From: Pecten maximus
Lineage: Eukaryota
Assembly (NCBI RefSeq): GCF_902652985.1
Contig: NC_047015.1
Location: 38,440,001 to 38,504,000 of the forward strand
Length of the DNA: 64,000 nucleotides
Reading direction: 5' to 3'
The translations under genes were made by a program, and so were the position numbers. The notes beneath the pieces were generated by a model that made no database searches, had not been told where the DNA came from, and saw only the letters and a program-made list of their open reading frames with translations. This document shows positions 11,150 through 31,700 of this stretch, in pieces (the stretch's first letter is position 1; each line of letters begins with the position of its first letter).

Positions 11150-11180
11150 TTTATACCGGGATGACGTAGGTTTGACGTCA
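11150..11180 (-). promoter_or_regulatory. Candidate CPE core promoter: TATA box plus CRE sites within the CPE/TFAM divergent intergenic region
   Basis: TATAAA on the - strand at 11150-11155; perfect CRE TGACGTCA at 11173-11180; CRE-like TGACGTA at 11162-11168; about 125 nt upstream of the CPE ATG. Confidence 0.55.
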
Positions 11181-11621
11181 AATGGAGAATTCCATACTCC
11201 CTAGGTCAATTGTATATCAAATTTCAGGTCATTATTAATATTCTATAATGAATAAATAATAAATAATTGTAAACTTTAATTCAAATGATATAATAACCGT
11301 TTTCGGCATAAATACGTTATATTATCCTGATTAATATAAATGTTATTGTTAGTGTGTTAAGTGATTCTCCCTTAGAGATAAAAAATAAGCAATGTAGAAA
11401 AAAACGAAACAAACTGATGAAATGGTTATTCACGCGTCGAAGATAGGAGAAAATATAGACGCTTCGAAGATGCAAATGGAATTAATTTATTGTTTTATGT
11501 ACTTTACACTATTTTGTCATCACTGCTGTGCCATCGTAAGAAAGCAAAGCGTATTTCGGTCCGAGATATAGGTGATTCCGAAAGATGTACTTCTTCATAG
11601 CGGAAACTCCGAATTGAAAGT

Positions 11622-11686
11622 ATGGCTGCTTACAGTATTGGCAGATGCAGTGGAATTTTCCGCAGTGTTATCAATGCTAATATAAG
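11622..11686 (+). CDS. TFAM: TFAM exon 1 (mitochondrial presequence)
   Basis: ATGGCTGCT...ATAAG|gtatca, phase 2, in frame with exon 2. Confidence 0.75.
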
Positions 11687-14600
11687 GTATCATACATATA
11701 TTTGACAAATGCCCTGATTAATGAGCAATAAAACCAAACAGTTGTATAAAAACAACGGCCTGTCGGCTGATGTACCTTTTGTTTACCCTATTTACAACGT
11801 TAGATTATCTGCTAGGCCCTATAACCCGAGTTTCTGCACGTTTGGTGTAGGGCCAGAGCGCACTACTATATATATATGAAAACGTGGAATTATCCGACAC
11901 CAAACTCCGACACCGTTTGGTGTCGCTAAGAATTTGGTGTAAATGTAATAAAATCGGGTGTGACATAACACCAACCTTACATATATGGATAAATGAGATA
12001 TTTATTTACCCCAGAACACCAATTTAGTCCCATCTTGGTGTTTTATTCCGTCCGTGGACCCTCGCTTTACACTAGTTAAAATTTCATACTGTTGACCCGC
12101 CATTTTGTAAGTGACAGTACCACTAACCGCCCGAATCGGAGCGCGATGGAGCGAAAAGACCACGTATCTTTTATTGTGTTTTTCTTCTTACATCGTTAAA
12201 ATTAAGAAAACTAAGCTTATTATTTCCCTTAGCCTGTTGTATTCAATTCAAAATTCATTATTTATAAATTATAACTGGTAAAATATATAAAAATAAATGT
12301 TGTATTATTTTTCTTTTCACTCCATCGAGCACTGATTAGGGTAATTAGTCCACCAGCTACCTACATAGTTAGCAATATGGCGTCGAGTCGAGTATGAAAT
12401 TTTGACTCACACTTTAGAAATCAGATAATTATATCTGAAGTATATAGAGGGTTGTGGCCCTTTGTTACATGTTTTATTCCAAAATTGTAAGCATGTTTAT
12501 CGAGTTATACCGAAAATTTCAAATGAATTCTGAGATTGTCTTAATAATATTATGCATACATGTGCCTTTCCGAAGCCTCTTTCCAAAGCGAAACTTGGGT
12601 GAAACGTGTTCAATATTTTTCTCTATATATCTTGATTACTTGCATGTATAATAAAATCGGGGAGAAAGCATTGAAGGAATTTTAACTGTCACATGCTCAA
12701 TTTTACCTTAGAGTTTACATCAGAGTCAAATTTGAACAGTTGTGTAAATTCTTTGCATGGTTCTTGCAGGCCAGCAATTTGCAATGCTTGGTATGGTACA
12801 GTTCAGGATAATGTATCGAAGAAAGAGCAACCATCTAAACCTGCCTCAGCATTTGTTTTGTTTTACAAGGATAAATTACCAATGATAAAGGAGAATAACC
12901 CAGGTATGTATACACTGTAAGGTAAAGCTGTGTATAGATACATTACTGACAAGGAAGTCCTAAGTTGCTCATTGCTATTTATTTTTTCTGATATTCCCAA
13001 GAACAGAACAGGTTGTATTTTAATTTGCTGGCCACATTTTGCTCTGATTATTAAATTTTTGCATATTTTCATATTGCTGGTACATATACCGGTAAAAGTA
13101 TTTTGTGGTACATGTAGGTGTACCATATATTTTAATTTAAATAAATACAGTCAAACCTGTATTAAGCGGCCACCCAAGGGACCGACAAATATTGGCTGCT
13201 TAAGACAGGTGGCTGCTTAAACCAGGTTGGCCAGGATCGGCCTGTTGCCCAATTCTTTTTTTTCAACAGTTTATTGAATTTATCACATTGTAATGCACTT
13301 ATTGATATTGATAACAATATACCATGTACAGTGTATTTTGAAATGAAAACCAACAAAGATAAAAGTTTTGATGAATTTGATAAAAATACCTGGTCATGTG
13401 ATCATTGCGGATGTCTACTTCCGGACAAAATGGCTGCTTATTACAGGACGATACAACAACTCGGGGCAGATTTTTGTGGCCGTTGGCCACGTTAGACAGG
13501 TGACCACTTATTTAAGATTATATAGTTTTTCCATCGGGCGGATCACCGACTGGCTGCTTAACGGAGGTGGCCGCTTATTCAAGATGGCTGATAGAGTAGG
13601 TTTGACTGTAAAAAGTAATACTGTAAACAGTGGTCCTCAACCTCTTGTTCTTAATGCATAATTTACAGTAAAATAAATGCAAAGAAAAACGAAAGCTTGC
13701 CTAGATGTGAAGGATATCACCATTTCTGCACAATAATTGCAAGTTAAAGTGAAGCCTGGACAAATCAAACAGAAAACACTGATTTGTTGTCAAAATTGGT
13801 TACTTGTCATTGTTTTTTGGAAGAAACAGTTGAATATCAGATGTCAATGTCACTATTACTGAAGATAACAAAACAATACCTAGACCATGAACTGATTGGG
13901 GATGGAAGTATTGTTCAGTAATGCCCTGCATGATTTGTCTACCAGGATGCTGAGTACAAGTTTTGGGTCTTTTATTGTCAGTCATGCTATCATTTAGCAG
14001 AATGAAATTGTTTTTGGCTCACTGGGATTAAGTTCAAGGGAGCTATTGCTATAACCACCCCCACCCATCCCACCTGGTGCGGTGTCCATGGACAGCTTGA
14101 TTATGATTGAAGTTTTTTCGGCATAGCCGTATAATATTCTTTTGGCCCCGGATATGACGCGACAGGAAGCGTTACTGGTCAAGATGAAGTATGTGATTGG
14201 TCAATGTAGTGGTAAATGTAAAATGCAGATATCCAGTTAAAAACGAAACAAATTTAAGATTGAATGCAAGCTGAATAAGTGGATGTATCTTTTCAAATGA
14301 CACATTAATGAAATTAAATTCCTGATTCAAATGCAGTCTTATTATCACCAAAAATGATTCAAACTGATATATAATTTTGTTATCCTTGCTGAAACACATT
14401 AGTTCGTTGATTTATTTCATCAGTAGTATTACATTATAACCACCAGCATTAAAACTATGCCATTTATCTTTTCTAAAGATATTTCTTGTTATAAAACAGT
14501 GTTTTGTCAATATTATTGAGAATACAACCTAGGTATTTGATGTATGGTCCTTGTGACAAAACCTATCCATTGGTACTATATCTGCAGGCCTGCTGACCTT

Positions 14601-17600
14601 GACCATGACCTTTGACCTACATTAAGTGAACTTTCAGAAAACTTTTTCCTTGGCCACAGTATGTTTTTCATTGGGGCTTTCATATTTGACGTGTGTTCCT
14701 TGATGATCTTTCGTTTGGTACTACATTTATGGACCAGCTGAACTTGACCATGGCCTTTGACTTTTAAAAGCTAATACAAAATTTTATCACACTCATGAGA
14801 GTTGTTGTATTCAGACAACTCTTGTTCCCTAGGCCTTTTTAATTGGAATTTTGCCATGTTTTTTCCCCACCCCATCAGACTGCAGTGTGTTTCAGATAGA
14901 GGCGCATCTTGCTAGATCAATACTGATATTCTCATTAAATATTCCATGATTGGGTGAGCTATGTTACTCTCAAAAATCTCTTATTTATCTTACATGTTCA
15001 TATATTGTAAGTAAAAATATTAACTAACCAGTTCTATGTTGCTGAATTCATTACAGGAGAAACTAAAATAGCTGTGCTGTCCAAATTGGCTGGTGAAATG
15101 TGGCATAAACTACCAGACAATGAAAGACAGGTAAATCGGCAGTTTGACATAAGGACTTCCTTAATTTAGATAACAGCTCTGATGTATTACTGTTGTACAG
15201 TATATATAAAAGTAATCCCTGTGGTATGCTTTGTCACTCTAATCAAACGTAACAATGTCTCATTCAGTGCTAAAAATCTATATTTATTGTTAGATGTTAT
15301 TGAATTGTTTGCTATGAAATTAAATAAGTAGGAAGTTTTCTGTTTTGTAGAAATATTTAAAATCAAGCCAAGATGCAATGGCCATTTACTCTGAGAAGTT
15401 AAAGAACTACACCGCAGGATTGAGCTCTGAACAGCTGGAGGAAATTGCACTAAATGCATGGAGAATGCGTGAAGAAAAGAAGATTAAAAAGGCATACCAG
15501 GTGTTAATTTGATTTTATATACCGTAGATTTGTTTTCTAGCTGTATGTACATATATATGCATGATACATAATTAAACTGTGATTGGCTGTTTCCCTGTTA
15601 GAAATATTTGGTGCCATTTTCAGATTTGAAAATTCATGCCACATTTTTGTCCAGGTCCACATACATGAATCTAATGTTAATACCTTAATTTACAGGCGGC
15701 TTTGTCAAAACATCCTATGCCAAAAAGACCCAAACCTGCTATGTGGGTTTTTGGTGAGACCATTGATAGTAAAAACTGCACATTAAAGGTAAGAATTTCA
15801 TACAGTATGCAAAATTAGTGATTTACATTTCTGTTTGAGTGACTTAGTTAGAAGAAATGGTCTGGACCCTTATACTATGTATATCAGGTTATTAAGAATT
15901 GTTTCATTTGGATGGTTAGTAAATGTGAAAAAACATAGATTATACTTGTATTCATATGTGTGTTGTGATGCTCTTTTAACTGATATTGTAGATATTGAAT
16001 TTCCTTAACATTTCATGTTACAGCAATCTGAATATTTTGTGAGACTGCTTCAGGCTGGTTAGCTTTCAAATGATACCTTTTGAAGACCTGAGTGTCCAGA
16101 TTTTTGGGACAAAGCATCTAGTACATTGAATACTAGTTATTATTATAATATCCTGTTCAAAAGATATATTTTTTTTACAAGAGGCCCATGGATCTAATCG
16201 GTCACCTGAGTTCTGAACTATTCTGATAGATGATGTTTAGCGCTTTTGCACTATTTAACACATCTCACCCCTGCGAACATGAAAGGGGAAGGTTTATTCA
16301 CTTGAACATACTTTGAAGCCAATTTGTTCTAGCATGCTTGGTTATTGGGAAGTTGTTTTAAGATTTGAACACATTTGATCCCTGTGACCTTGAAAGTTGG
16401 TTTAAGCAATTCATTTGTCCAAACTGGTAGGCCTTCATCCCAGCATGCTACTGGCTCAATATCATGTCAAATCTTTGAAACTCCATAACCATATATATGG
16501 CATTGCTTGACATCAAGAGATAAACACAATTCTGATGTAAAAATAGGCCCAGGGGTATTTCCCCACCCCAAGGGACTTAGTTTCTTTAAACACTATCATT
16601 TTGAGTCTGGACTTCACCACATATAGCATTGTAAGACATCAGCAAAAAAAAACTATTAACAGGTTGAATATGAACATTGTCTTGATGCTTGCTTAAATCA
16701 ACCAGGTGAGTGATATAGCCCCTCTTGGCCTCTTCTAAGTTTGTCATAATCATAGACATAACATTATTGTACCTCTTAATAGGCCTAGAATTTGATAGTT
16801 TTGACTGCTGAGCTGTTGTTTCTTTAAACATTCTTTGGTTGATTTTATATAGGAGCTGAATCAGAAAGTGAAATCAGGATGGCAGGGGTTGTCTTATGCA
16901 GAGAAAGAGGTAAGCATATTGTTTATTCTGAATGTAATAAACATGTAGAAATGATTTAATATTTAAATCAATAAGTTTGATAAAAGTTTAATATTTTAAT
17001 CCATTAGTTTGATATGCTTATTTTGGAATATTTCTCCAAACCAGCCCTGTTGTTCAACTTTGTTGAAGGTACTTCTAGTCAGTGTGATGTTGAAGGTACT
17101 TCTAGTCAGTGTAAATTTCACTTGAAACCATGGCCAGCTCTGTTGGAACAAGTTCTGTACCCTGGTATCCATATTGTTGAAGGCACTTTTGTTTCAAATT
17201 TCAGACTTCACTTACTCACATCTTAAAGTATCAGAAAATAAAATAATGTATAGGGTTACATTTGAAACAACTAGGTCAAAGGTCATTGAAATAAATTTTC
17301 CTTTATTATGTTAACAAAGTTGTTTTCGGTGACCCAGCATGTTTATGCAATGCAATGTATTTTGTTTAGCGTAATATGAATCATTTCAAGACTTCATTTA
17401 GTGCATCACAAAATTTGACATGTTGTGAAAAAATTCTCAAGGACTGCAAGGCTGGTGTCATAATAATCGCCATGCATATTGCTTAACTTATATAAAAGTA
17501 TTGTCAAGACCCTTACATTAGTTATCAATAGTCTGTGACACCTTAAAACTGATGTGACAACCATGTTTATTGTCGACTTAATGAATGAACTAAAGTCTTT

Positions 17601-20600
17601 GAGGTGTGAGCAAAAATTTTTATGGTCAATATTTAAGTTAATAAGAGTGCTTGAGAATATATGGCTGATTGTATAGTACTGTTTGAATTACCAGGTAGTC
17701 ACTCCCTGTTGATTGACCCTGTTTACAAATGTGATGTTTCCTGATTCAGTAGATATTTTGCTGGAATAGTGTGGATGAAATTGCTCAGTTATAAAGGGAA
17801 AAAAAATATCTATGGGAAGTATGCATGTTCAGAAATTTGTTAAGTCCTATTGTGGAGGATTGGTAAATCAGAAATTGTAATTTAGAGTAATAAGTATAAG
17901 TTTTTGCTATTATTGATTACAGTCGATAATACATTGGTTGATAACAAGTAATTAGTAAATTGGATATTAAAACCCATATTCATTTCTCATGTATTGATGA
18001 GGCCAGAGAAAAGAGTGATTTGTTGATCATTGAGATAAATTTATTTTAATGATTAACTGATATACTGTACCATGAATGTGCAAAGAAGAGGATAGGAATG
18101 AAAAGTGAGCAACATGCCATTAAATGCAGATTTTTAGCCCACCATCATCAGATGGTGGGCTATTCAAATTGTCTTGCGTCCATGGTCTGTCCGTCCGTCC
18201 GCCCCTCCGTCTCAATTCTTGTTATCGCTATTTCCCAGAAAGTACTGAAGGGATCTTTCTCAAATTTCATATGAAGGTTCCCCTTGGTCCCTAGTTGTGC
18301 ATATTGCATTTTGGGACCAATCGGAAAACAACATGGCCGACAGGTGGTCATCTTCGGAAAACAACATGGCCGACAGGTGGCCATCTTGGATTTTGACAAT
18401 TTTGGAAGGGTCTTGAGGTGCTTACTAAAGTGGGAATTTTTTGGGGACTCAGGTTTTCTCCAGGGACTGATAGGGACTAATAGGCGGGACCAAAAGCGGA
18501 CAAATCTACTGAAATATTTCAGTGACCATTAAGGCCTCTTGTTGATTTTAAAGACATATGTTGCTGGCTATGAAGAAAAGATGGAGCGATGGAAGACAGA
18601 CTTTGGACTATGGGTACAAGACATGGTACTAGATGGTTCCTCTGACTTCATTACTATGCATGAGCTGAAGCAGGTTTGTATTCAACCCATAAGAACACTT
18701 TCCCTGTAGAATTGTATTCTTCTGGCATAAACATGTTAGAGATGTAGAGATTCACTGATCTATTGTAAATAATCATCACTAGTATTGATGCATTGTTTGA
18801 TGGTCTTCGGTAACCTGATAAGAATCTATTGAATGTATTGATTCTGATATTGCACATTTTTGACATTGTCATGCAGGAAAACTTCCAGGTTGAAATATTG
18901 TAATAACAACGACAACAGTTATACAGTTTGTATTTAACTTACATTTAATTCACTCACAATGGCTGATTGGCCATGTATCGTGATACTATTATGTACTGTA
19001 ATTTAATTCACTCACAATTGCTGATTGGCCATGTATCGTGATACTATTATGTACTGTAATTTAATTCACTCACAATTGCTGATTGGCCATGTATCGTGAT
19101 ACTATTATGTACTGTAATTTAATTCACTCACAATTGCTGATTGGCCATGTATCGTGATACTATTATGTACTGTAATTTAATTCACTCACAATTGCTGATT
19201 GGCCATGTATCGTGATACTATTATGTACTGTAATTTAATTCACTCACAATTGCTGATTGGCCATGTATTGTGATACTATTATGTACTGTATTGCCCTACC
19301 CCTTAAAATTTGCTGATATCACAATGTATGATTACCGTTTTAAGCGTTATACCTCTAGGATGTCAGACAGCAAAGGTGGCCTATTTTTTAGGATAAATGT
19401 AGCGTAACATTATGCAATCAACTATGAGTATCTTTCCATGAAAAAAACCGTAGTCAACTATAATCCGATTTTGTTGCATTTAAATGTTTGTATGTAATGT
19501 AACAAGGTTTTCTCTTTGGTAAATCATTGAAATTACAACTTTATTTCTTTCATAAGGAGCTGCGAAGACTTGGCATGCCAAAACGTCCAATAACTGCCTT
19601 CATGTTATATACAAGAGCATGTCGGATGGAGCAAGGCAACATGTCTATAACAGTAAGTTATGTGTATCATTAAGTTTTTGACAGGATTTCTTGTTTTCAT
19701 ATTATTTAAGGTTTAAAGAGTCAAAGCAAAAAAGGTATTGCAATTTTTTTGGCATCTCAGAACCTATCCAAAATTTTCCATACTATTGATAAAATGCAAC
19801 AGAAAAGTTTGGAAAAAAAGTTTTTAGTTCTCAGTAAAGTTTAGGAGAACCTATTCTATCCCCAGGCACACTGTCTGGTTAAGGAGAATGATAAAAATCA
19901 GCAAAACCTGTCTTTGTTGATTAGGGTTATGTGACAGGAGAGATGATAATACTTTCTTAACTAGGTCTTGTTGATAGTATGGTATTCCTATACTTGCATT
20001 AATTTTCAATCCAATTGTTTATTGCACAATTCTATCTTTACATAAGTAATGGATGTTTTTTCTGGTCCATAATTAGGGTTACGATCACGATTAAAGTAAA
20101 GTTCAAATCACAATTAACCTATCCATAGTTTGATATTAATTATAGGTGGCAAACCATTAAGATTCACCAAGTGCTTGTATGGAAATACCCACAGCCCTAA
20201 GTCCCCCCCCCCCCCTGCCAAAAAAAAAAAACAACAACAACCCTAAAACTTTTGTCAGATTTGCTGATTAATACCCCACTGCTCCCAATGTACACTGAAT
20301 CCCATTCTCTCCAAAATGCTTGTTAAGAACAAGAGGCCTAGAGGACCTGCATTACTCACCTAGATATTTTAGTGATCATGGCAAAATACTCTCATATAAA
20401 TTATATTACAAAAAGAAGATTTCTTACATTTTTTAGCTCAATTTCCCCTATACTAGATCTCCTTGGCTCAATAATGCTCCAGACTAAATCATTTTTTCTA
20501 TTGGGGCCCTCTGGCCCGAGGACCTCGCCCTCCATTTATACAACTTTTTGTCTACTCTGTCCAATAAAGCTCCAGACCAGATTTCATCAAAATCCATTCA

Positions 20601-21598
20601 ATTTTTGAGGTTTATTTTAGATTTTTTAAGGAAATGTTATCGTACCGTGGACAAACAGAAGGGCAGACAACTGACACTGCACCATGGCATAAACTCACCA
20701 ATCCCTCAGACCATGTCATCTTAGAAAAAAATCCTTGGTTACAATCAGTCTTAACACTTTTGTTTCTTTCAGGAGTTTTCCAAGGAGATGGGATCTCGCT
20801 GGAAGCAGTTGAGCGATGAAGAAAAGCAGGTAAATTTCAATATAATCTGCCATATTTCTATTGAATGGATCTGTATCATGGCAGTTTTGTCTTGCTACAT
20901 TGAAATACAGGAAAGAAGAATAAGGTATCACATTTACAAAAAATTTGCATCAACATCAGTAAATTTGCAGTGATAGGAGTCGTAGACTGGTTACCAGACA
21001 GTAATTCTGGTAATCTTAATCTTATCTCCCCGAGTTTGAAAAGAATCTGACAGATCAGTAAAAGATCTCATAAGTCTCATTCATATTTAAAAAATATCAT
21101 ATTCTAAAGACAAGGGCCATTTCAAAGTGTCTGATGTGTACACTGCCACTCAAACTTTTCAAAATTAGAAGATGTTACAGAGAACTACAAATAATTGTGT
21201 TTATCCTTCTCTCTGTTTAGGTTTTCAATAAAGAATGGAAAAATGAATGGGACAATTACACGAAGGATATGTCACAATGGAAAGCAAGTCTGAATGAACG
21301 CGAAGCTACCTTCTCTGAGCTGGCTCAAAAGATCATTAAGGGAACCCTAGAAAGAGAAATAAAAGCAGCAGAAAAAATGTTGGAAAAACAGAAAGAAAAA
21401 GAGAAAATTGCAAAGGAAAAGGAAAAAGAACAAAAGAAACTAATCATGCAAAAGGAAAAGTTAGCCAAGCAAAAGGAAAAAGAGAAGTTAGCGAAACAAA
21501 AAGAAAAAGAGAAATTAGCAAAACAGAAAGAAAAAGAAAAATTTGCCAAACAAAAGGCAAAAGAACAAGAGAAGTTAGCCAAAAAAAATCCAAAATAA
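11622..21598 (+). CDS. TFAM: Mitochondrial transcription factor A-like protein with three HMG boxes (~407 aa); join(11622..11686,12770..12903,15057..15130,15351..15500,15696..15788,16853..16909,18554..18673,19557..19652,20773..20829,21221..21598)
   Basis: Arg/Ser-rich N-terminus with no acidic residues (MAAYSIGRCSGIFRSVINANIRP). HMG motifs PSKPASAFVLFY..EMWHKLPDNERQKY, PKRPKPAMWVFG..SGWQGLSYAEKETY and PKRPITAFMLYT..SRWKQLSDEEKQVF. Intron phases 2,1,0,0... and 150/96/57-nt exons match vertebrate TFAM as I recall it. Open frame of 1224 nt. Confidence 0.85.
11845..12407 (+). mobile_element. Composite repeat in TFAM intron 1 (module C 11845-11995 plus TIR element A 12073-12407)
   Basis: A has the TIR agttaaaatttcatact/agtatgaaattttgact; both modules recur at 30.43-31.51 kb. 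Confidence 0.7.
12770..12903 (+). CDS. TFAM: TFAM exon 2 (HMG box A, helix 1)
   Basis: ttgcag|G CCA GCA...PSKPASAFVLFYKDKLPMIKENNP G|gtatgt. Confidence 0.88.
13148..13608. mobile_element. Tc1/mariner/pogo-type MITE (461 bp)
   Basis: ta|cagtcaaacct ... aggtttgactg|ta; subterminal aagcggccacc/ggtggccgctt repeats. Confidence 0.88.
15057..15130 (+). CDS. TFAM: TFAM exon 3 (HMG box A, helix 2)
   Basis: ttacag|..ETKIAVLSKLAGEMWHKLPDNERQ|gtaaat. Confidence 0.88.
15351..15500 (+). CDS. TFAM: TFAM exon 4 (box A helix 3 and linker, 150 nt)
   Basis: ttgtag|KYLKSSQDAMAIYSEKLKNYTAGLSSEQLEE...KKIKKAYQ|gtgtta. Confidence 0.85.
15696..15788 (+). CDS. TFAM: TFAM exon 5 (second HMG box B1, helix 1, 93 nt)
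   Basis: ttacag|AALSKHPMPKRPKPAMWVFGETIDSKNCTLK|gtaaga. Confidence 0.8.
16177..16470 (-). mobile_element. HINE 3' fragment
   Basis: acaagaggcccatgg...ggtcacctgag is the reverse complement of the 3' end seen at 25492-25526. Confidence 0.6.
16853..16909 (+). CDS. TFAM: TFAM exon 6 (box B1, helix 2, 57 nt)
   Basis: atatag|ELNQKVKSGWQGLSYAEKE|gtaagc. Confidence 0.8.
18131..18543 (+). mobile_element. HINE/DINE-1-like non-autonomous Helentron in TFAM intron 6
   Basis: T-run start, 5' hairpin tagcccaccatc..gatggtgggcta, (GTCC)n microsatellite, 3' gtgacc-ttaaggcctcttgtt end. Confidence 0.8.
18554..18673 (+). CDS. TFAM: TFAM exon 7 (box B1, helix 3, 120 nt)
   Basis: ttaaag|TYVAGYEEKMERWKTDFGLWVQDMVLDGSSDFITMHELKQ|gtttgt. 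Confidence 0.75.
18943..19291. repeat. 58-bp tandem repeat, 6 near-identical copies (TFAM intron 7)
   Basis: Unit atttaattcactcacaattgctgattggccatgtatcgtgatactattatgtactgta. Confidence 0.95.
19557..19652 (+). CDS. TFAM: TFAM exon 8 (third HMG box B2, helix 1, 96 nt)
   Basis: cataag|ELRRLGMPKRPITAFMLYTRACRMEQGNMSIT|gtaagt. Confidence 0.85.
20328..20725 (-). mobile_element. Degenerate HINE in TFAM intron 8
   Basis: Begins aacaagaggcc...ctcacct (reverse complement of the HINE 3' end); gaca/gacg-type microsatellite remnant at the other end. Confidence 0.6.
20773..20829 (+). CDS. TFAM: TFAM exon 9 (box B2, helix 2, 57 nt)
   Basis: tttcag|EFSKEMGSRWKQLSDEEKQ|gtaaat. Confidence 0.88.
21221..21598 (+). 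CDS. TFAM: TFAM exon 10 (box B2 helix 3 and Lys/Glu-rich tail)
   Basis: gtttag|VFNKEWKNEWDNYTKDMSQWK...(EKLAKQKEK)n...KNPK-TAA. Confidence 0.85.
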   Translation, partial: VFNKEWKNEWDNYTKDMSQWKASLNEREATFSELAQKIIKGTLEREIKAAEKMLEKQKEKEKIAKEKEKEQKKLIMQKEKLAKQKEKEKLAKQKEKEKLAKQKEKEKFAKQKAKEQEKLAKKNPK

Positions 21599-21900
21599 TG
21601 GAAATTAGCCAGATAAATGAGACAAAAAGGACATTGGAACATTGAAAGGCATAATTACTACATGATAATACGACATCAGTGGCAAAAGGGACAATGGTTG
21701 GGTAGTTGTTACAGAATTGTATGATATCAGTGGTGTACTGTAGCAGTTGTATCAACATCTTCTGTTAATGAACCCAGTATTTTATCTCACCACTGGATAA
21801 TGAGCCACATTTGTGTTGAGGGCAGTTTCACTTATCTTTTAATCTGTAAAAGATGATGTGTTTGTTAATACTTTAGAATGTAGAACATCATTGTTTTCAA

Positions 21901-21906
21901 AATAAA
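21901..21906 (+). terminator. Candidate polyadenylation signal of TFAM
   Basis: AATAAA about 300 nt after the stop codon. Confidence 0.5.
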
Positions 21907-22435
21907 AGTTTCTGCATTTGTAATACAGATGATCAAAATTGAATGTATTGCCTGAACCATCTTAGGTGGAACAAGGAGATCAAATATACAGTGTATTTGT
22001 GTGGATTATTTGTTCCCTAGCTGTTCAACTGGCATTCGGGACTATAAGCATCCTCTCCATTGTTATGTATGTAATGCCAATTTTTTCAGCCCTTTAGCGA
22101 CTTCATTCCTCTAGGAATTTTGATTAAATTTTACACAATGTGAAGGGACCATAATATCTTGGTCAAGTTTGAATTTCAGGGGTTTTGGGTCAAGGCCAAG
22201 GTCACTGTTACTTTATTAAGTGGGGGAAAGTAGGGGGACATGTATTGTTTTAGCAATACCCAGTATGCTTGTTGAAGTTACCAATTCACAGTGGAAATAA
22301 GAGTAATAGAGTTCATGTTTTATTCAACAGACATCTGATAACCATCAACCAATCTGATCATGGTAGTCTCATTAAGATTCACCTATTTGGTATAAGTAAA
22401 AAAAGAGTTTTTGTAAAACTATACCAGACAGATCT

Positions 22436-22862
22436 CAATCTAATTAAAATCTAGATGGTCACCCTTACTCCGTTACATGAACATCTAGCAACATCTCATA
22501 AGGGGTCACGTCAGGTTGACCTTTTGGATTAGCCAATCAAATTTCTATTCCAGAACCTTGGAAGTGAATTTTGTATGTCCGAATTAGCATGACTAGAGTA
22601 CATAGTTTGCATAATATGTCAATTTGTTTCAAGCCATTTCGTCCCACAAATCATTTAGCTATATACATCTGTGCCAAAATGGTTTGCTTCAGATGCATAC
22701 TGTGACGAAATGTTTTGCTTCAATTACATCGACAATTTGACAATTCGCCCTGAAAGTGAAATACACACATCTCAAAGGTCATCAGAACGTGACCCCTTAT
22801 GGGATGTTGTTAGATGTTCATGTAACGTAGTGAGAATGACCATCTAGATTTTAATTAGATTG
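22436..22862. mobile_element. Mutator-like MITE (427 bp) with 9-bp target site duplication
   Basis: ~75-bp imperfect TIRs caatctaattaaaatctagatggtca... / ...tgaccatctagattttaattagattg; exact GACAGATCT on both flanks (22427-22435, 22863-22871). Confidence 0.9.
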
Positions 22863-24276
22863 GACAGATCTAGACTTCATGAAAACCAGATAATTCCATC
22901 AAATATTATCATAGAAGTAGCCATATAATCAAACTTGTGACTTGTTTGATACAAACAAATCTAAAATTTCTTGAAAAGATGTACTGTCTACATGCGTTGA
23001 AAGGCTGAATGTCAAAAACGAGATAAATTTAACATGTTAAACTTTAATGCATTATAATGTTAGAACTAGCTTAAAAAATAACCAGTAATTTTTTTTGCAT
23101 TTGTAGTGTTACATACAGCTACCATTTAACACTTTAAATATGGTTTTATTACTTTCAGAATTATTTCAATGCATTAAACTTCATCAGATTAACCAATCAG
23201 TTGCACCCTATGCATTTAGCATTTCGGAAGAAAATTCTCCATGGAAGTGGGAAATATGCATGAATATTTGTTTGTCCAGAAAATAAAGGCTCAACATATG
23301 ACAAAAGATGTATGAATTTCAATGAAGGTGTTTGGTTTGCTTCACTCTGCAAAGATTATTGTTTTGGAATTTTAAACAGTTTAATGACAGACTATTATAG
23401 TAACATTGACAGAATATCAATGTGTAAAAGAGAACGCCAGTACATATTTGTATTTCTGAAAACCAATATAAACAGAGACAGTATATACATGTATATCAAT
23501 ACTCAATTTGTGCAGTGAACCAACAAATGTTTCAGTGTGCCTCATTCTGTTGCTCATTTGCGTATTCATATTTATGAGATACATACGGTACATTGTTATA
23601 CATTGCTGCACCTGGTACATTCTGTTGATGTTGAATACAATGTTTGCAGACCTGTTCTGAAAGGTGTAGCACACTGACATGAACGCTGCATTTTTTAGGG
23701 GTTTTGATAGTTTTGTCATCTTTGAAAATTGATGAGATAATCCAAAACATCAGTCAATAATGCAGTAAATGGAAAATGACAAGTATAGCTGCTGTGTATT
23801 CATAGGTCCAACTTACATTACACGTTAAGTGTTCATCAATCTGGGTCGGTGGCCATGGCAAGGTTGAGGACAGAATTTGTATAACTGGCAAATGATGGTA
23901 TTCTCTGTAAACTACATGTATCTTCAAAGTTTTAGTAAAAAAAAAAGGATCCTTTGTTATTGCTTTTCCTGGAATAGTCAATACAAAGCCATATTTGGAC
24001 AGTGCAGGAAGTGCCATTGTGTATTCGAATGCAGGACCCATAATATCATACCTAAAGGACATAAAAATGGTATAAGATATATACTTATGAATCTCTATAA
24101 AATAAAAAAATAGTGTCACCTCATGTGTAGTGTCTCTCTGGTGTTAGCTACACACCCATTGCCAACACAATAACAGTAATCTACTGTCGTTTTGATTCCC
24201 TCCAGAAATCTGGCATTGTCGGCCATGCTGTAATGTCATTGAATGTACAAATTTATTTGGTCTGTTATTTTAGACA

Positions 24277-28729: not shown

Positions 28730-31700
28730 CTGGAAACAGATAAACACAATTACATACTTTTCAATTTTAGTCTGAATGATTCAACGTAGCAAGCAATTCA
28801 GACTAGCATTAGCTACGTAAATGTACCCTTGTAGAGCTCTTTCTAAAGTCTTTTAAAACTGTTGTTAAAATTATTAAGTTAATTACATACAATCATACCT
28901 AAATTCTCTTTGTTATATAACCTACATGTTAACAAAAATGTATCTCAATATTTCTCCTTCATATAACGACAGATGATAGAAGAATACATTTATCATTACC
29001 AAACAGTAGTCAGATGTATATACTGCTGTTAAAATTGAAATAAATATTCCAGGGATCACAACTAAACAAGAATTGCCACCTGTGAGAGGGTTGAAATTTG
29101 GTATTCTTTTTTAAAAAAAACATGTAAAAGGTCATGGTCAGCAGGTCTGCAAATGTAGTACCAAAGTAAAGGCCTAGTCACAAGGAACACGCATGTCAAA
29201 TACCTAGGCAGCATTTTGATTAGTATTAGTATTAACACTGTTATATAAGTTTAACCTAGCTGTCTATGGATGGATTATAGCAAAATTAAAGCTCCCCTTT
29301 ACTTGTCCAGGCAAGCTAAAAATCAATGCTGAAATTTGTTTTACAGGTTGACATAATGAAACCACAAATATAATATGAAACTGAATTATAAATCAATTAA
29401 GGGGAAAGCTTAGAGTTTTACCTTGACAAATGTCATCTTGTAGTAATACAATGCTCCCTGTAGTACTGCAAATGGTAGGATGATTGTCTGAAAAGGAAAG
29501 CAAAGTAGGTTTTTCACTTTGAGAGAATATGATATTGTCAGGAAATAATGAAACGATTGTCATGAAAAATCTATCAGTCACTATTTACTTTGTTGCAAAA
29601 AATACTATGCTTTTTAATGATAATTTTCTCGATATTGACCACAGGAAAACAAAAAGAGGCAGTAATTGTATATTACACTGTATAAAACACTCCATCTTTT
29701 AATTTGTAAGTAATTAATATGGAACAGCATCAAATTTTACCTGAAAATAAAAGAGACCTATCCCCAATTGCAGCACAACTCTGGACAGAATTGCAACAAA
29801 AACACAGCCGGCCAGCCTAAGGAGATTAAGCTGGTGCTGTGGAGATCGCTCTGAAGTGGACTTTAGTTGGGAGTCTTCAACAGATGATGGCACTTTACTA
29901 GATTTTTTACTGTCTGATGGTATCGATGATTGCTGAATCTTAACTGTGTTCCTTGTAGCTCTGTGACGTAAATTGTCTGTATCCGATTGTGAAGAATGAA
30001 GTCTGTCAGGGGTCTGAATGCATGGTGTGGAAGTATTTTCTCCAGCTCCAATATTTACAGTGTTACCAAGGATAACAGTTTCTATGTCCGGGTCTCTGGT
30101 CTTATTATTGGATAGATCTAATATATCAGCATCATCATTTTTCTTTTCTTTAGTGACTGCAGGTGTTACATCATTGTTTGCGTGAATTTCCTGCTGTGCT
30201 GGTGCTGGTTCTTGAACTTTAAAATTATTTACGGCACTGGCTGTTTTTGATGTCAAATCATCACCTAAAAAATCAACAGAAAATTGATGTACAAACAATG
30301 TATATATAAGTAATAAACCTTGAGGAAAACCTTATCTTCAAACCATAACTTGATTCCTTGATAATTAAAGTTTGACTTACTGGTATACTGTATTTGTGCA
30401 CATTTACCATGCAACACTGTCTTCAAAACACTGTTGACCTGCCATTTAGTAAGTGACGGTTCAACTAATCACCGAATCGGAGCACAATGGACCAAAAAGA
30501 CCAAATATCATCTATTTTGTTTTTCTTCCTACAAATAGTTTAAATCAAGAAAACTATATAAGTTTATTTTTTCCCCAAAACCTGTTATACTGTAAAAGTA
30601 CTTATTTTAGCGCAGTCAAATTTTAGCGCAAACACGGAAAATTGTAAAATATGATTTATTAGCGTGGACGGGAATTAGCGCAGTCGTCCCGACTACGCTA
30701 AAAAAAATCCGGAAAATATTTCAGTTCTAAAATTAGGCACTGACAGACGACCCGTGTTCTAAAATTAGACATCGACTAAACATGCGACCACTGATAGATG
30801 TATGAATAGACGACCCGTGTTCTACAGATAAGTCACTAGTGAACTGTTTTCATTAAAATTACATGTGAGTTGTAGTTGTTATGTTATTTATTATCTTCCC
30901 AAAGCCGATTTCAGTATTCTGAATTTCACCATGTTGAAAAGATGGTTAGTGTTGGCTGTCAATTCCCCACCGCCATCGGCAACTTTATCAGAGGTGTTGG
31001 TAATAAAAGTTGAGTTTACAGAGAGTATTTTTTTGTGATTAGTCTAAACAAACATTCTATCCAGCTATTGGGCTGTTCTACGACTTCAATAGGGCATATC
31101 AGGTATTACCTGTGTTGGATATATTCCCCCTGTTTGATACCAATGGAATATTCTAGCTAGTAGTGGTATCGACAAATGATGGCCGCCGGCTTGCATTGAC
31201 TACCGTTATACGTAATTTAAATTCAAAATTTTAGCGCTGTACATGAATTAGCGTTCCACAAAGAGCGCGAAAAGTGCTAAAATTAAACTACCGCTAAAAT
31301 AAGTACGTTTACAGTATTTAATACAAGAATACATTATTTACAAATTATAAGCGGTAAACTATCTGGCAGGTCAACAGTTTATCCATATATATAAGGCAGG
31401 TGTTATGTCACACCCGATTTAATTGTGTTTGCACCAAATCTTAGCGACACCAAACAGTGTTGGAGAGTTCCACATTTTCGTGTAGTAGTGCGTTCTTGCC
31501 CTACACTACTTCAGCTAGCTAAAGGTCTCTGGCTATTTTTTGGTTCTGATGCCAACTGACCTTCAGCAACCGAACCCTATTTGACACTGTGCAAGTTCTG
31601 CCCTAAAATCAGGGTGGAAAGAAAGAGAAGATAATATCGGTATTTATTACATTTTTACCAGTGAAATATCAAAAATTATTCAATCTATAAAAGTGATATT

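What the first reader, a model, noticed from the sequence alone, without database searches (positions are those of the whole stretch)
11622..21598. TFAM with three HMG boxes, from tandem duplication of the box-B exon module
Seen: ten in-frame exons encode a presequence, HMG box A (exons 2-4) and two further complete HMG boxes. These are exons 5-7 (93/57/120 nt) and exons 8-10 (96/57/terminal), each with PKRP...W..L...EK. Established: animal TFAM and yeast Abf2 have two HMG boxes that bend mtDNA into a U-turn; from recall, vertebrate TFAM has 150/96/57-nt exons 4-6 with these phases. Inference: the last three exons were duplicated. Exon 7 (Y..ERWKTDFGLWVQDMVLDGSSDFI) aligns without gaps to the recalled human terminal exon (Y..[23 protein letters not shown]), so it looks like an old terminal exon that gained a donor site. 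Both copies are strongly diverged yet stop-free, which suggests selection. A third bending domain would change nucleoid footprint and compaction. I know of no described three-box animal TFAM, but I cannot check the literature.
Basis: partly seen in the sequence, partly recalled or inferred. Interest (0 to 1): 0.88.

Follow-up and report, generated by a model that had tools for sequence, protein, structure and literature searches.

The report
Scallop TFAM with extra HMG-box module
The king scallop's single TFAM-like gene (TFAM packages mitochondrial DNA) is expressed as one mRNA that carries a diverged extra copy of the second DNA-bending domain and a long charged helical tail, an undescribed variant of a protein that normally has two such domains.

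Summary
Ten GT..AG exons at 11622-21598 (+) splice into a 1224-nt, stop-free CDS of 407 aa. Transcript contigs from four RNA runs of four studies join exons 5-6-7-8-9-10 at exactly the predicted introns.

The genome matches the published Pecten maximus assembly, and every exon tested is single copy.

Box A (exons 2-4) and the last box (exons 8-10) are clear HMG boxes. Exon 8 hits human TFAM box B best. It starts at human E148 and is 96 nt long, like human exon 5.

The middle module (exons 5-7) gets no Pfam hit exon by exon. It is significantly similar to the last box (z 8.8, 0/2000 shuffles) and shares its 93-96/57-nt phase-0 exon plan. A local HMG profile gives it 13.5 bits.

The two modules share no DNA similarity, so the duplication is old.

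TFAM identity is likely. An intragenic duplication is likely but not proven (tree 89/78; AU tests do not reject the alternatives). The "old terminal exon" claim is untested.

I could fetch no orthologues, and found no three-box TFAM in the searched literature.

The parts
11622..11686 (+). Exon 1 (65 nt). Start codon and presequence-like N-terminus (MAAYSIGRCSGIFRSVINANIR).
   Evidence: frame, GT donor; no acidic residue before position 35 and three Arg in the first 22 residues. Transcript support is indirect only, from contig lengths.
12770..12903 (+). Exon 2 (134 nt, starts in phase 2). End of the presequence and the N-terminal strand plus helix 1 of HMG box A.
   Evidence: HMG_box profile 1-24, 19.6 bits. 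PDB hits TOX (E 0.034), human TFAM box A residues 48-73 (E 0.05) and Abf2 (E 0.25).
15057..15130 (+). Exon 3 (74 nt). Helix 2 of box A.
   Evidence: HMG_box profile 27-48, 18.4 bits. HMGB3 and Abf2, both weak.
15351..15500 (+). Exon 4 (150 nt). Helix 3 of box A and a 33-aa basic linker.
   Evidence: module A scores 44.1 bits on the local HMG profile. Single copy in the genome.
15696..15788 (+). Exon 5 (93 nt). Start of the middle, diverged module B (MPKRPKPAMWVF...).
   Evidence: Joint to exon 6 seen in 4 runs. Aligns to exon 8 with MPKRP and A invariant. No Pfam or TFAM hit on its own.
16853..16909 (+). Exon 6 (57 nt). Helix 2 of module B (W..LS..EK).
   Evidence: joints. 7 of 19 residues identical to exon 9 and 32 of 57 nt identical. 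Local HMG profile positions 25-53 match here. No Pfam hit.
18554..18673 (+). Exon 7 (120 nt). Helix 3 of module B and a 19-aa spacer. It is spliced onward to exon 8.
   Evidence: Joint 18673>19557 in all four runs. Single copy. No PDB, Pfam or Atlas hit.
19557..19652 (+). Exon 8 (96 nt). Start of box C, the counterpart of vertebrate TFAM box B (ELRRLGMPKRPITAF...).
   Evidence: the nine best PDB hits are human TFAM, with query residue 1 aligned to E148; human exon 5 is 96 nt, E148-Q179. HMG_box profile 1-16.
20773..20829 (+). Exon 9 (57 nt). Helix 2 of box C.
   Evidence: HMG_box_2 21.9 bits and HMG_box 18.8 bits, profile 29-48. The piece was sent with one extra intronic codon to reach the 20-aa minimum.
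21221..21598 (+). Exon 10 (378 nt). Helix 3 of box C, then a tail of about 100 aa that ends in K/E-rich repeats (27-nt unit, KQKEKEKLA, net charge +14), then the stop codon.
   Evidence: AlphaFold2 on this exon alone gives one helix over residues 2-122, mean pLDDT 94, from a single sequence. 18 public runs from 8 studies hold this exon plus its 3' UTR.
21599..22643 (+). 3' UTR. Its extent is inferred from the longest RNA contig and the end is approximate.
   Evidence: the 2282-nt X7 contig has exon 10 from record position 858, so about 1.04 kb lies beyond the stop. No clear poly(A) signal was seen at that end.

Best explanation
This is the single-copy TFAM-type gene of the king scallop, Pecten maximus. 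TFAM is the mitochondrial HMG-box factor that packages and transcribes mtDNA. The main mRNA encodes a 407-aa precursor made of six parts: a presequence-like N-terminus; HMG box A; a 33-aa basic linker; a strongly diverged HMG-like module (exons 5-7); a well-kept HMG box that corresponds to vertebrate box B (exons 8-10); and a helical tail of about 100 aa ending in K/E-rich repeats. The extra module most likely arose by an old tandem duplication inside the gene of the three-exon box-B unit. The upstream copy then evolved fast, and its last exon is now spliced onward in frame. Shown: the gene model, the splicing of exons 5-10, single copy, HMG character of boxes A and C, B-C similarity, and the shared exon plan. 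Inferred: import into mitochondria, mtDNA binding and bending by A and C as in TFAM, and a modifying role for the middle module and tail (a longer footprint or spacing, or bridging). The middle module is probably a weak DNA binder at best.
For: Gene model with 10 GT..AG exons and no stop. One RNA contig per run joins exons 5-10, in 4 runs from 4 studies. 18 runs from 8 studies hold exon 10 plus the UTR. The assembly statistics equal those published for P. maximus: 918,306,378 bp in 3,983 scaffolds. Exons 2, 4, 7, 8 and 10 each match only themselves in the genome. Pfam HMG_box hits in consecutive profile segments support A (exon 2, 19.6 bits; exon 3, 18.4 bits) and C (exon 8, 14.2; exon 9, 18.8, or 21.9 with HMG_box_2). 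A local HMG profile built from 13 boxes of the same genome scores A 44.1, C 35.3 and B 13.5 bits (p 3.7e-6). Internal alignments give B-C z 8.8 and A-C z 10.1 (0 of 2000 shuffles each), while A-B is z 1.3. B and C share the phase-0 intron at the same alignment column and the 57-nt middle exon. The B+C clade has support 89/78, with a very long B branch. Exon 8 matches human TFAM from E148 and has the size of human exon 5. No acidic residue occurs before position 35. No nucleotide similarity is left between the modules, yet the frame, six splice sites and expression are all kept.
Against: All PDB matches to TFAM are weak (E 0.05-0.3), and TOX slightly beats TFAM for exon 2. Exons 4, 5, 7 and 10 find no TFAM chain. 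Pfam finds nothing in exons 5-7. The middle module has net charge 0. AU tests do not reject A+B or A+C. No orthologue could be fetched, so there is no reciprocal best hit, no dN/dS and no view of relatives. The presequence was judged by composition only. Contigs cannot show minor isoforms that skip exons 5-7 or 8-10; both skips would keep the frame.
Confidence: 0.68

Rival explanations
1. The gene is TFAM, but only two boxes (A and C) work as DNA-bending domains. The exon 5-7 module has decayed into a structured spacer or a protein-contact module that lengthens the linker. The protein would then be a two-box TFAM with an 'insert', not a three-box bender.
For: No Pfam hit for exons 5, 6 or 7. 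Only 13.5 bits on the local profile, and only over helix 2-3. Helix 1 is 2 residues short, with M/W in place of the usual aromatic pattern. Net charge is 0 and pI 6.2, against +4 for box A. The B branch is very long, 4.9 changes per site. In vitro, an artificial third HMG box did not significantly raise DNA affinity over two boxes (PMC8157925).
Against: PKRP, the helix-2 Trp, LS..EK and the helix-3 aromatic positions are kept. The frame and splice sites have been held over a time long enough to erase all DNA similarity. Human box B itself binds DNA weakly on its own (PMC2777442).
Confidence: 0.3
2. The three-module mRNA is only one isoform. Frame-preserving skipping of exons 5-7 (270 nt) or 8-9 would give a canonical two-box TFAM that does the core job, and the long form would be an accessory or regulated variant.
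For: Exons 4-10 are all phase 0, so any module skip keeps the frame. Human TFAM has an exon-5-skipping isoform (PMC2777442). Logan contigs drop rare variants (notes).
Against: In all four runs the assembled transcript contig carries exons 5-10 in a row, and no listed joint skips a module. Only 21 nt of exon 4 were in the laid stretch, so a 4>8 joint could not have been seen.
Confidence: 0.2
3. It is not TFAM but a nuclear multi-HMG-box protein (HMGB, UBF or TOX-like) that happens to have a basic N-terminus.
For: TOX is the top PDB hit for exon 2 (E 0.034). A profile of exons 5+8 ranks HMGB1, SSRP1 and UBF above TFAM. A K/E-rich tail is unlike the short vertebrate TFAM tail.
Against: Exon 8's nine best PDB hits are TFAM, aligned from the exact start of human exon 5 and with the same exon length. 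Abf2, which is mitochondrial, also appears for exons 2 and 3. The first box starts at about residue 44 after an acid-free N-terminus. No other TFAM-like locus was found in the genome with these pieces.
Confidence: 0.07
4. It is an assembly or annotation artefact: a falsely duplicated segment or chance open frames.
For: None found.
Against: The modules share no DNA similarity, so this is not a collapsed or duplicated assembly. Independent RNA contigs from four studies contain both modules spliced together.
Confidence: 0.01

Closest known systems
Vertebrate TFAM (human TFAM; PDB 3TMM, 3TQ6, 9MN4)
   Same: An N-terminal targeting-like leader, HMG box A, a linker of about 30 residues, and a second box whose first exon begins ELxxLGxPKRPxxA. 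That exon has the same start (E148) and the same 96-nt length as scallop exon 8. Box A aligns to TFAM residues 48-73. By my recall, not tested here, the 150-nt exon 4 and the 57-nt exon before the last exon also match.
   Different: The scallop gene has ten exons against seven. An extra 270-nt, three-exon module (exons 5-7) lies between the linker and the box-B counterpart. The tail is about 100 aa, helical and K/E-rich, with 27-nt repeats, in place of the roughly 25-aa C-tail. The precursor is 407 aa against 246 aa.
Yeast Abf2 and other fungal or protist mtHMG proteins (Gcf1, Glom, KAP6)
   Same: They are mitochondrial HMG-box packaging proteins. Weak hits of exons 2 and 3 to Abf2 were seen. 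Gcf1 pairs a weakly conserved box with a coiled coil, and Glom adds a lysine-rich DNA-condensing region (PMC7463775). Both resemble the diverged box plus charged tail seen here.
   Different: All are described with two boxes. They have no shared exon plan and are not orthologous in detail.
Engineered three-HMG-box construct of Chlamydomonas HBD1 (PMC8157925)
   Same: It is a tandem array of three HMG boxes tested for DNA binding.
   Different: It is artificial and derives from a chloroplast protein. Its affinity did not differ significantly from the two-box form. It is not a natural mitochondrial protein.
UBF and plant 3xHMG-box proteins
   Same: They carry more than two HMG boxes in tandem.
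   Different: They are nuclear, have other domain contexts, and have no presequence. Similarity to them is generic PKRP..AF only.

Membership tests
TFAM (mitochondrial transcription factor A) | N-terminal mitochondrial targeting presequence | tested here: inconclusive
   Judged by composition only: no D or E before residue 35, Arg at positions 8, 14 and 22, and a modest hydrophobic moment of 0.38-0.46. No targeting predictor or localisation data were available.
TFAM (mitochondrial transcription factor A) | Two tandem HMG boxes separated by a basic linker of about 30 residues | tested here: met
   Box A scores 44.1 bits and box C 35.3 bits on the local HMG profile. Pfam exon-level hits fall in consecutive profile segments. 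A 33-aa linker with net charge +2 follows box A. An extra module sits between the linker and box C.
TFAM (mitochondrial transcription factor A) | Best sequence matches are TFAM (orthology) | tested here: inconclusive
   Exon 8: the top 9 PDB hits are human TFAM box B, E 0.2-0.35. Exon 2: TFAM is second after TOX, E 0.05. Other exons give no TFAM hit. The full spliced protein could not be sent to any search, and no orthologues were retrieved.
TFAM (mitochondrial transcription factor A) | Conserved gene structure: a 96-nt exon encoding the start of box B (human exon 5, E148-Q179) | tested here: met
   Exon 8 is 96 nt and phase 0. Its residue 1 aligns to human E148. Human exon 5 is 96 nt, E148-Q179 (PMC2777442).
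TFAM (mitochondrial transcription factor A) | Short C-terminal tail of about 25 aa after box B (vertebrate type) | tested here: not met
   The tail is about 100 aa, with a K/E-rich 27-nt repeat array, net charge +14, and is predicted to be helical. Tails are known to vary among TFAM orthologues, and Abf2 has none.
TFAM (mitochondrial transcription factor A) | Localises to mitochondria and binds or bends mtDNA | not testable with these tools
   This needs localisation and DNA-binding experiments.
HMG_box (Pfam PF00505), middle module, exons 5-7 | Matches the HMG-box profile and three-helix L-shaped fold | tested here: inconclusive
   No Pfam hit for exons 5, 6 or 7 sent separately. The local profile gives 13.5 bits, p 3.7e-6, over positions 25-53 only. 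Similarity to box C is z 8.8, 0 of 2000 shuffles. The fold was not predicted because the joined module has no reference.
Intragenic tandem duplication of the box-B exon unit | The paralogous modules share intron positions and phases and are each other's closest relatives | tested here: inconclusive
   Exon plans are 93/57 against 96/57 nt, all phase 0, with the intron at the same alignment column. B+C are sisters at 89/78. A+B (p-AU 0.086) and A+C (0.082) are not rejected. The only outgroup boxes are from the same genome.

The most novel reading that the evidence does not exclude
Pectinid scallops, and perhaps a wider group of bivalves, keep under selection a natural TFAM with three HMG-type modules and a long charged helical tail. 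This would change how mtDNA is bent, spaced and compacted. It would be a natural test of why mitochondrial packaging proteins otherwise hold to two boxes. It might also relate to the unusually large, repeat-rich mitochondrial genomes reported for scallops; that last link is my speculation from general knowledge and was not tested.
Probability: 0.4. Interest if true: 0.65.

Novelty: new variant of a known kind. Interest (0 to 1): 0.55.

Why it matters
Reviews describe TFAM, Abf2 and their kin as two-box proteins (PMC7463775, PMC10295803). The two-box U-turn is the accepted basis of mtDNA packaging and promoter activation. A natural, expressed TFAM that carries an additional diverged box between the linker and box B, plus a basic helical tail of about 100 aa, offers a ready-made comparison. 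It could show how box number, spacing and tail set footprint, bending and compaction. It is also a clean example of exon-module duplication in which a former last exon is now spliced onward. If the middle module proves inert, the case still shows how much insertion the TFAM linker region tolerates.

Tried and rejected
Orthologue hunt, all blank. A blank here says little, because the libraries seem not to hold this animal's proteins.
- The search of protein representatives with exon 4: 0 hits.
- The search for homologous proteins with exon 10, region 1-70: 0 hits. The length window of that tool also excludes the full protein.
- Protein Atlas with exon 7: no usable hit.
- The search of earlier findings: nothing near the locus or by words.

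PDB searches with exon 7, exon 5, the exon 10 start and exon 4 gave only chance hits or none. A profile of exons 5+8 hit HMG boxes in general and did not sharpen the TFAM call.

MAFFT of exon 7 against exon 10 gave a gapped alignment that conflicts with the ungapped one, and BLASTP gave E 0.054. Helix-3 homology between the modules is therefore weak on its own.

A genome-wide Pfam HMG_box scan did not pick up this locus, because its exon-sized pieces score too low.

Rfam found nothing in the gene region. Pfam found nothing in the three longest ORFs of the window.

Step left out: the joined 407-aa model, and the joined single boxes, have no reference. They were therefore not sent to Pfam, the PDB search, homology search, structure prediction or fold search. 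Exons were searched one by one by reference. The joined sequence was used only inside local scripts, for the frame check, internal alignments, the local HMM and the tree.

Full report
**What is there.**

| Exon | Coordinates | Length (nt) |
|---|---|---|
| 1 | 11622-11686 | 65 |
| 2 | 12770-12903 | 134 |
| 3 | 15057-15130 | 74 |
| 4 | 15351-15500 | 150 |
| 5 | 15696-15788 | 93 |
| 6 | 16853-16909 | 57 |
| 7 | 18554-18673 | 120 |
| 8 | 19557-19652 | 96 |
| 9 | 20773-20829 | 57 |
| 10 | 21221-21598 | 378 |

All nine introns are GT..AG with pyrimidine-rich acceptors, and exons 4-10 all begin in phase 0.

**Expression and splicing.** Exon 10 plus its 3' UTR is held by 18 public runs from 8 studies of one organism, four of them on record as RNA-Seq. 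I laid the contigs of four runs from four studies on 15480-21470. In each run one transcript contig (893, 1945, 2048 and 2282 nt) carried exons 5, 6, 7, 8, 9 and 10 joined at the predicted GT..AG introns. This includes the critical exon 7 to exon 8 joint (skip of 883 nt).

Exon 5 starts 436-442 nt into the two longest contigs. Contigs cannot show minor isoforms. Only 21 nt of exon 4 were in the stretch, so an exon 4 to exon 8 skip could not have been seen.

**Whose genome.** The window's assembly has 918,306,378 bases in 3,983 contigs. These are exactly the figures published for the king scallop Pecten maximus (PMC7191990). Six-frame searches of that genome with exons 2, 4, 7, 8 and 10 find only this locus. 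The one other match is a chance-level hit for exon 2, E 2.45. The gene is therefore single copy, and no second TFAM-like locus showed up.

**The domains.** The joined protein has no reference, so it was not sent to any search or folding tool. Exons were sent one by one.
- Box A: Pfam HMG_box matches exon 2 (profile 1-24, 19.6 bits) and exon 3 (27-48, 18.4 bits).
- Box C: Pfam matches exon 8 (profile 1-16, 14.2 bits) and exon 9 (29-48, 18.8 bits; HMG_box_2 21.9 bits). In both boxes these are consecutive parts of one box.
- Middle module: exons 5, 6 and 7 give no Pfam hit.

I built a local profile from 13 HMG boxes found in the same genome with PF00505. It scores module A at 44.1 bits and C at 35.3 bits. 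The middle module B scores 13.5 bits (p 3.7e-6 for one sequence), and only over helix 2 and the start of helix 3.

Smith-Waterman scores against 2000 shuffles:

| Pair | z | Shuffles reaching the score |
|---|---|---|
| A-C | 10.1 | 0 of 2000 |
| B-C | 8.8 | 0 of 2000 |
| A-B | 1.3 | 228 of 2000 |

The B-C alignment keeps MPKRP, the helix-2 Trp, LS..EK and a helix-3 Trp. It places the phase-0 intron of both modules at the same column. Module B is two residues shorter in helix 1 and has net charge 0 (pI 6.2), against +4 for box A and +1 for box C. The middle module is therefore a real but strongly diverged relative of box C. "Complete HMG box" overstates what can be shown.

**Is it TFAM?** Exon 8 alone has human TFAM as its nine best PDB hits. 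Its residue 1 aligns to E148 of the full-length chain (ELRRLGMPKRPITAFMLY against ELTLLGKPKRPRSAYNVY), E 0.2-0.35. Human TFAM has seven exons, and exon 5 is 96 bases encoding E148-Q179 (PMC2777442). Scallop exon 8 therefore has the same start and the same 96-nt length.

Exon 2 hits TOX (E 0.034), then human TFAM box A at residues 48-73 (E 0.05), then yeast Abf2 (E 0.25). Exon 3 hits HMGB3 and Abf2 weakly. The N-terminus has no acidic residue before position 35 and three arginines.

Each item is weak on its own. Taken together with single-copy status they make TFAM the likely identity (about 0.8). It is not proven, because a reciprocal search with the full protein could not be run. From recall, not tested here, human exons 4 and 6 are 150 and 57 nt. 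That would extend the match in gene structure.

**Duplication.** B and C share the 93-96/57-nt phase-0 plan. Box A has a phase-1 intron a few residues earlier. A maximum-likelihood tree of the three boxes plus ten boxes from the same genome puts B and C together, at ultrafast bootstrap 89 and SH-aLRT 78. B sits on a very long branch, 4.9 changes per column. AU tests do not reject A+B (p 0.086) or A+C (p 0.082), so the tree alone is not decisive.

No nucleotide similarity remains between the two modules, exons or introns. Shared residues often use different codons. The duplication is therefore old and not an assembly artefact. An open 90-codon frame, six splice sites and inclusion in the main mRNA after that much divergence argue for selection on the frame. 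No dN/dS could be computed.

Exons 8-10, not 5-7, are the better counterpart of vertebrate box B. The idea that exon 7 is a former terminal exon is plausible. If intron 7 were retained, the frame would stop after 11 codons, by direct reading. However, exon 7 finds no TFAM chain at E<=10, so its alignment to the human terminal exon stays a recollection.

**The tail.** After box C comes a tail of about 100 aa. Its last 67 aa are K/E-rich with net charge +14, and they are encoded by a 27-nt repeat of 6.7 copies, KQKEKEKLA. AlphaFold2 on exon 10 alone predicts a single helix over residues 2-122, mean pLDDT 94. That is a single-sequence model of a cut-out piece and is indicative only. The tail differs from the short vertebrate C-tail. 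It recalls the coiled coil of Gcf1 and the lysine-rich region of Glom (PMC7463775).

**Literature.** Full-text searches for three-box TFAM or mitochondrial HMG proteins found none. Two reviews describe only two-box forms (PMC7463775; PMC10295803). An engineered three-box HBD1 bound DNA no better than the two-box form (PMC8157925). Automatic database annotations of mollusc TFAMs could not be checked.

**How it most likely works (inferred).** The presequence directs import into mitochondria. Box A, the linker and box C then bind the minor groove and bend mtDNA as in TFAM. The neutral middle module lengthens and perhaps stiffens the spacing between A and C, and may add a weak third contact. The basic helical tail adds non-specific DNA contacts or bridging.

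**Verdict.** This is a new variant of a known kind, of moderate interest. The decisive missing pieces are a cross-species survey, a fold model of the joined middle module, and isoform-resolved RNA data.

Noticed in passing
window 18130-18410 (intron 6): A high-copy interspersed repeat. The own-genome search gave 2868 first-look candidates, and the scored copies are about 88-91% identical over 225 bp, often with partial tandem units beside them. RNA contig depth here reaches 10^4-10^5, far above the gene's exons, and many aberrant 'joints' fall inside it. No Rfam family matches.
   Followed up: partly
window 18943-19290 (intron 7): A 58-bp tandem repeat of 6.0 copies, 99% matching. It did not block read laying.
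   Followed up: no
window 13150-13600 (intron 2): A stretch with many copies of a TGGCTGCTTAA-type motif. TRF reports a 17-nt unit at 2.1 copies at 13193-13227. It looks like a short interspersed element.
   Followed up: no
window 11162-11180: Two CRE-like sites, TGACGTAG and the perfect palindrome TGACGTCA, lie about 440 bp upstream of the start codon. A 10-codon upstream ORF (ATG at 11585) lies just upstream of the apparent transcript start.
   Followed up: no
window 18674-18709: If intron 7 were retained, the reading frame would run 11 more codons to a TAG, giving a two-module (A+B) product. No such transcript was seen in the contigs.
   Followed up: no
window 19555-19652 and 20773-20827: The X7 RNA contig differs from the assembly by 1 letter in exon 8 and 2 letters in exon 9. 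No run differs in exons 5-7 (table 8). The numbers are too small to interpret.
   Followed up: no
window 17061-17112 (intron 6): A perfect 27-bp direct duplication, 1.9 copies.
   Followed up: no
window 23754-24119, 29714-30298, 50583-51020 (all - strand): These are the three longest ORFs of the window (121-194 aa). None has a Pfam match. They are probably not genes.
   Followed up: partly
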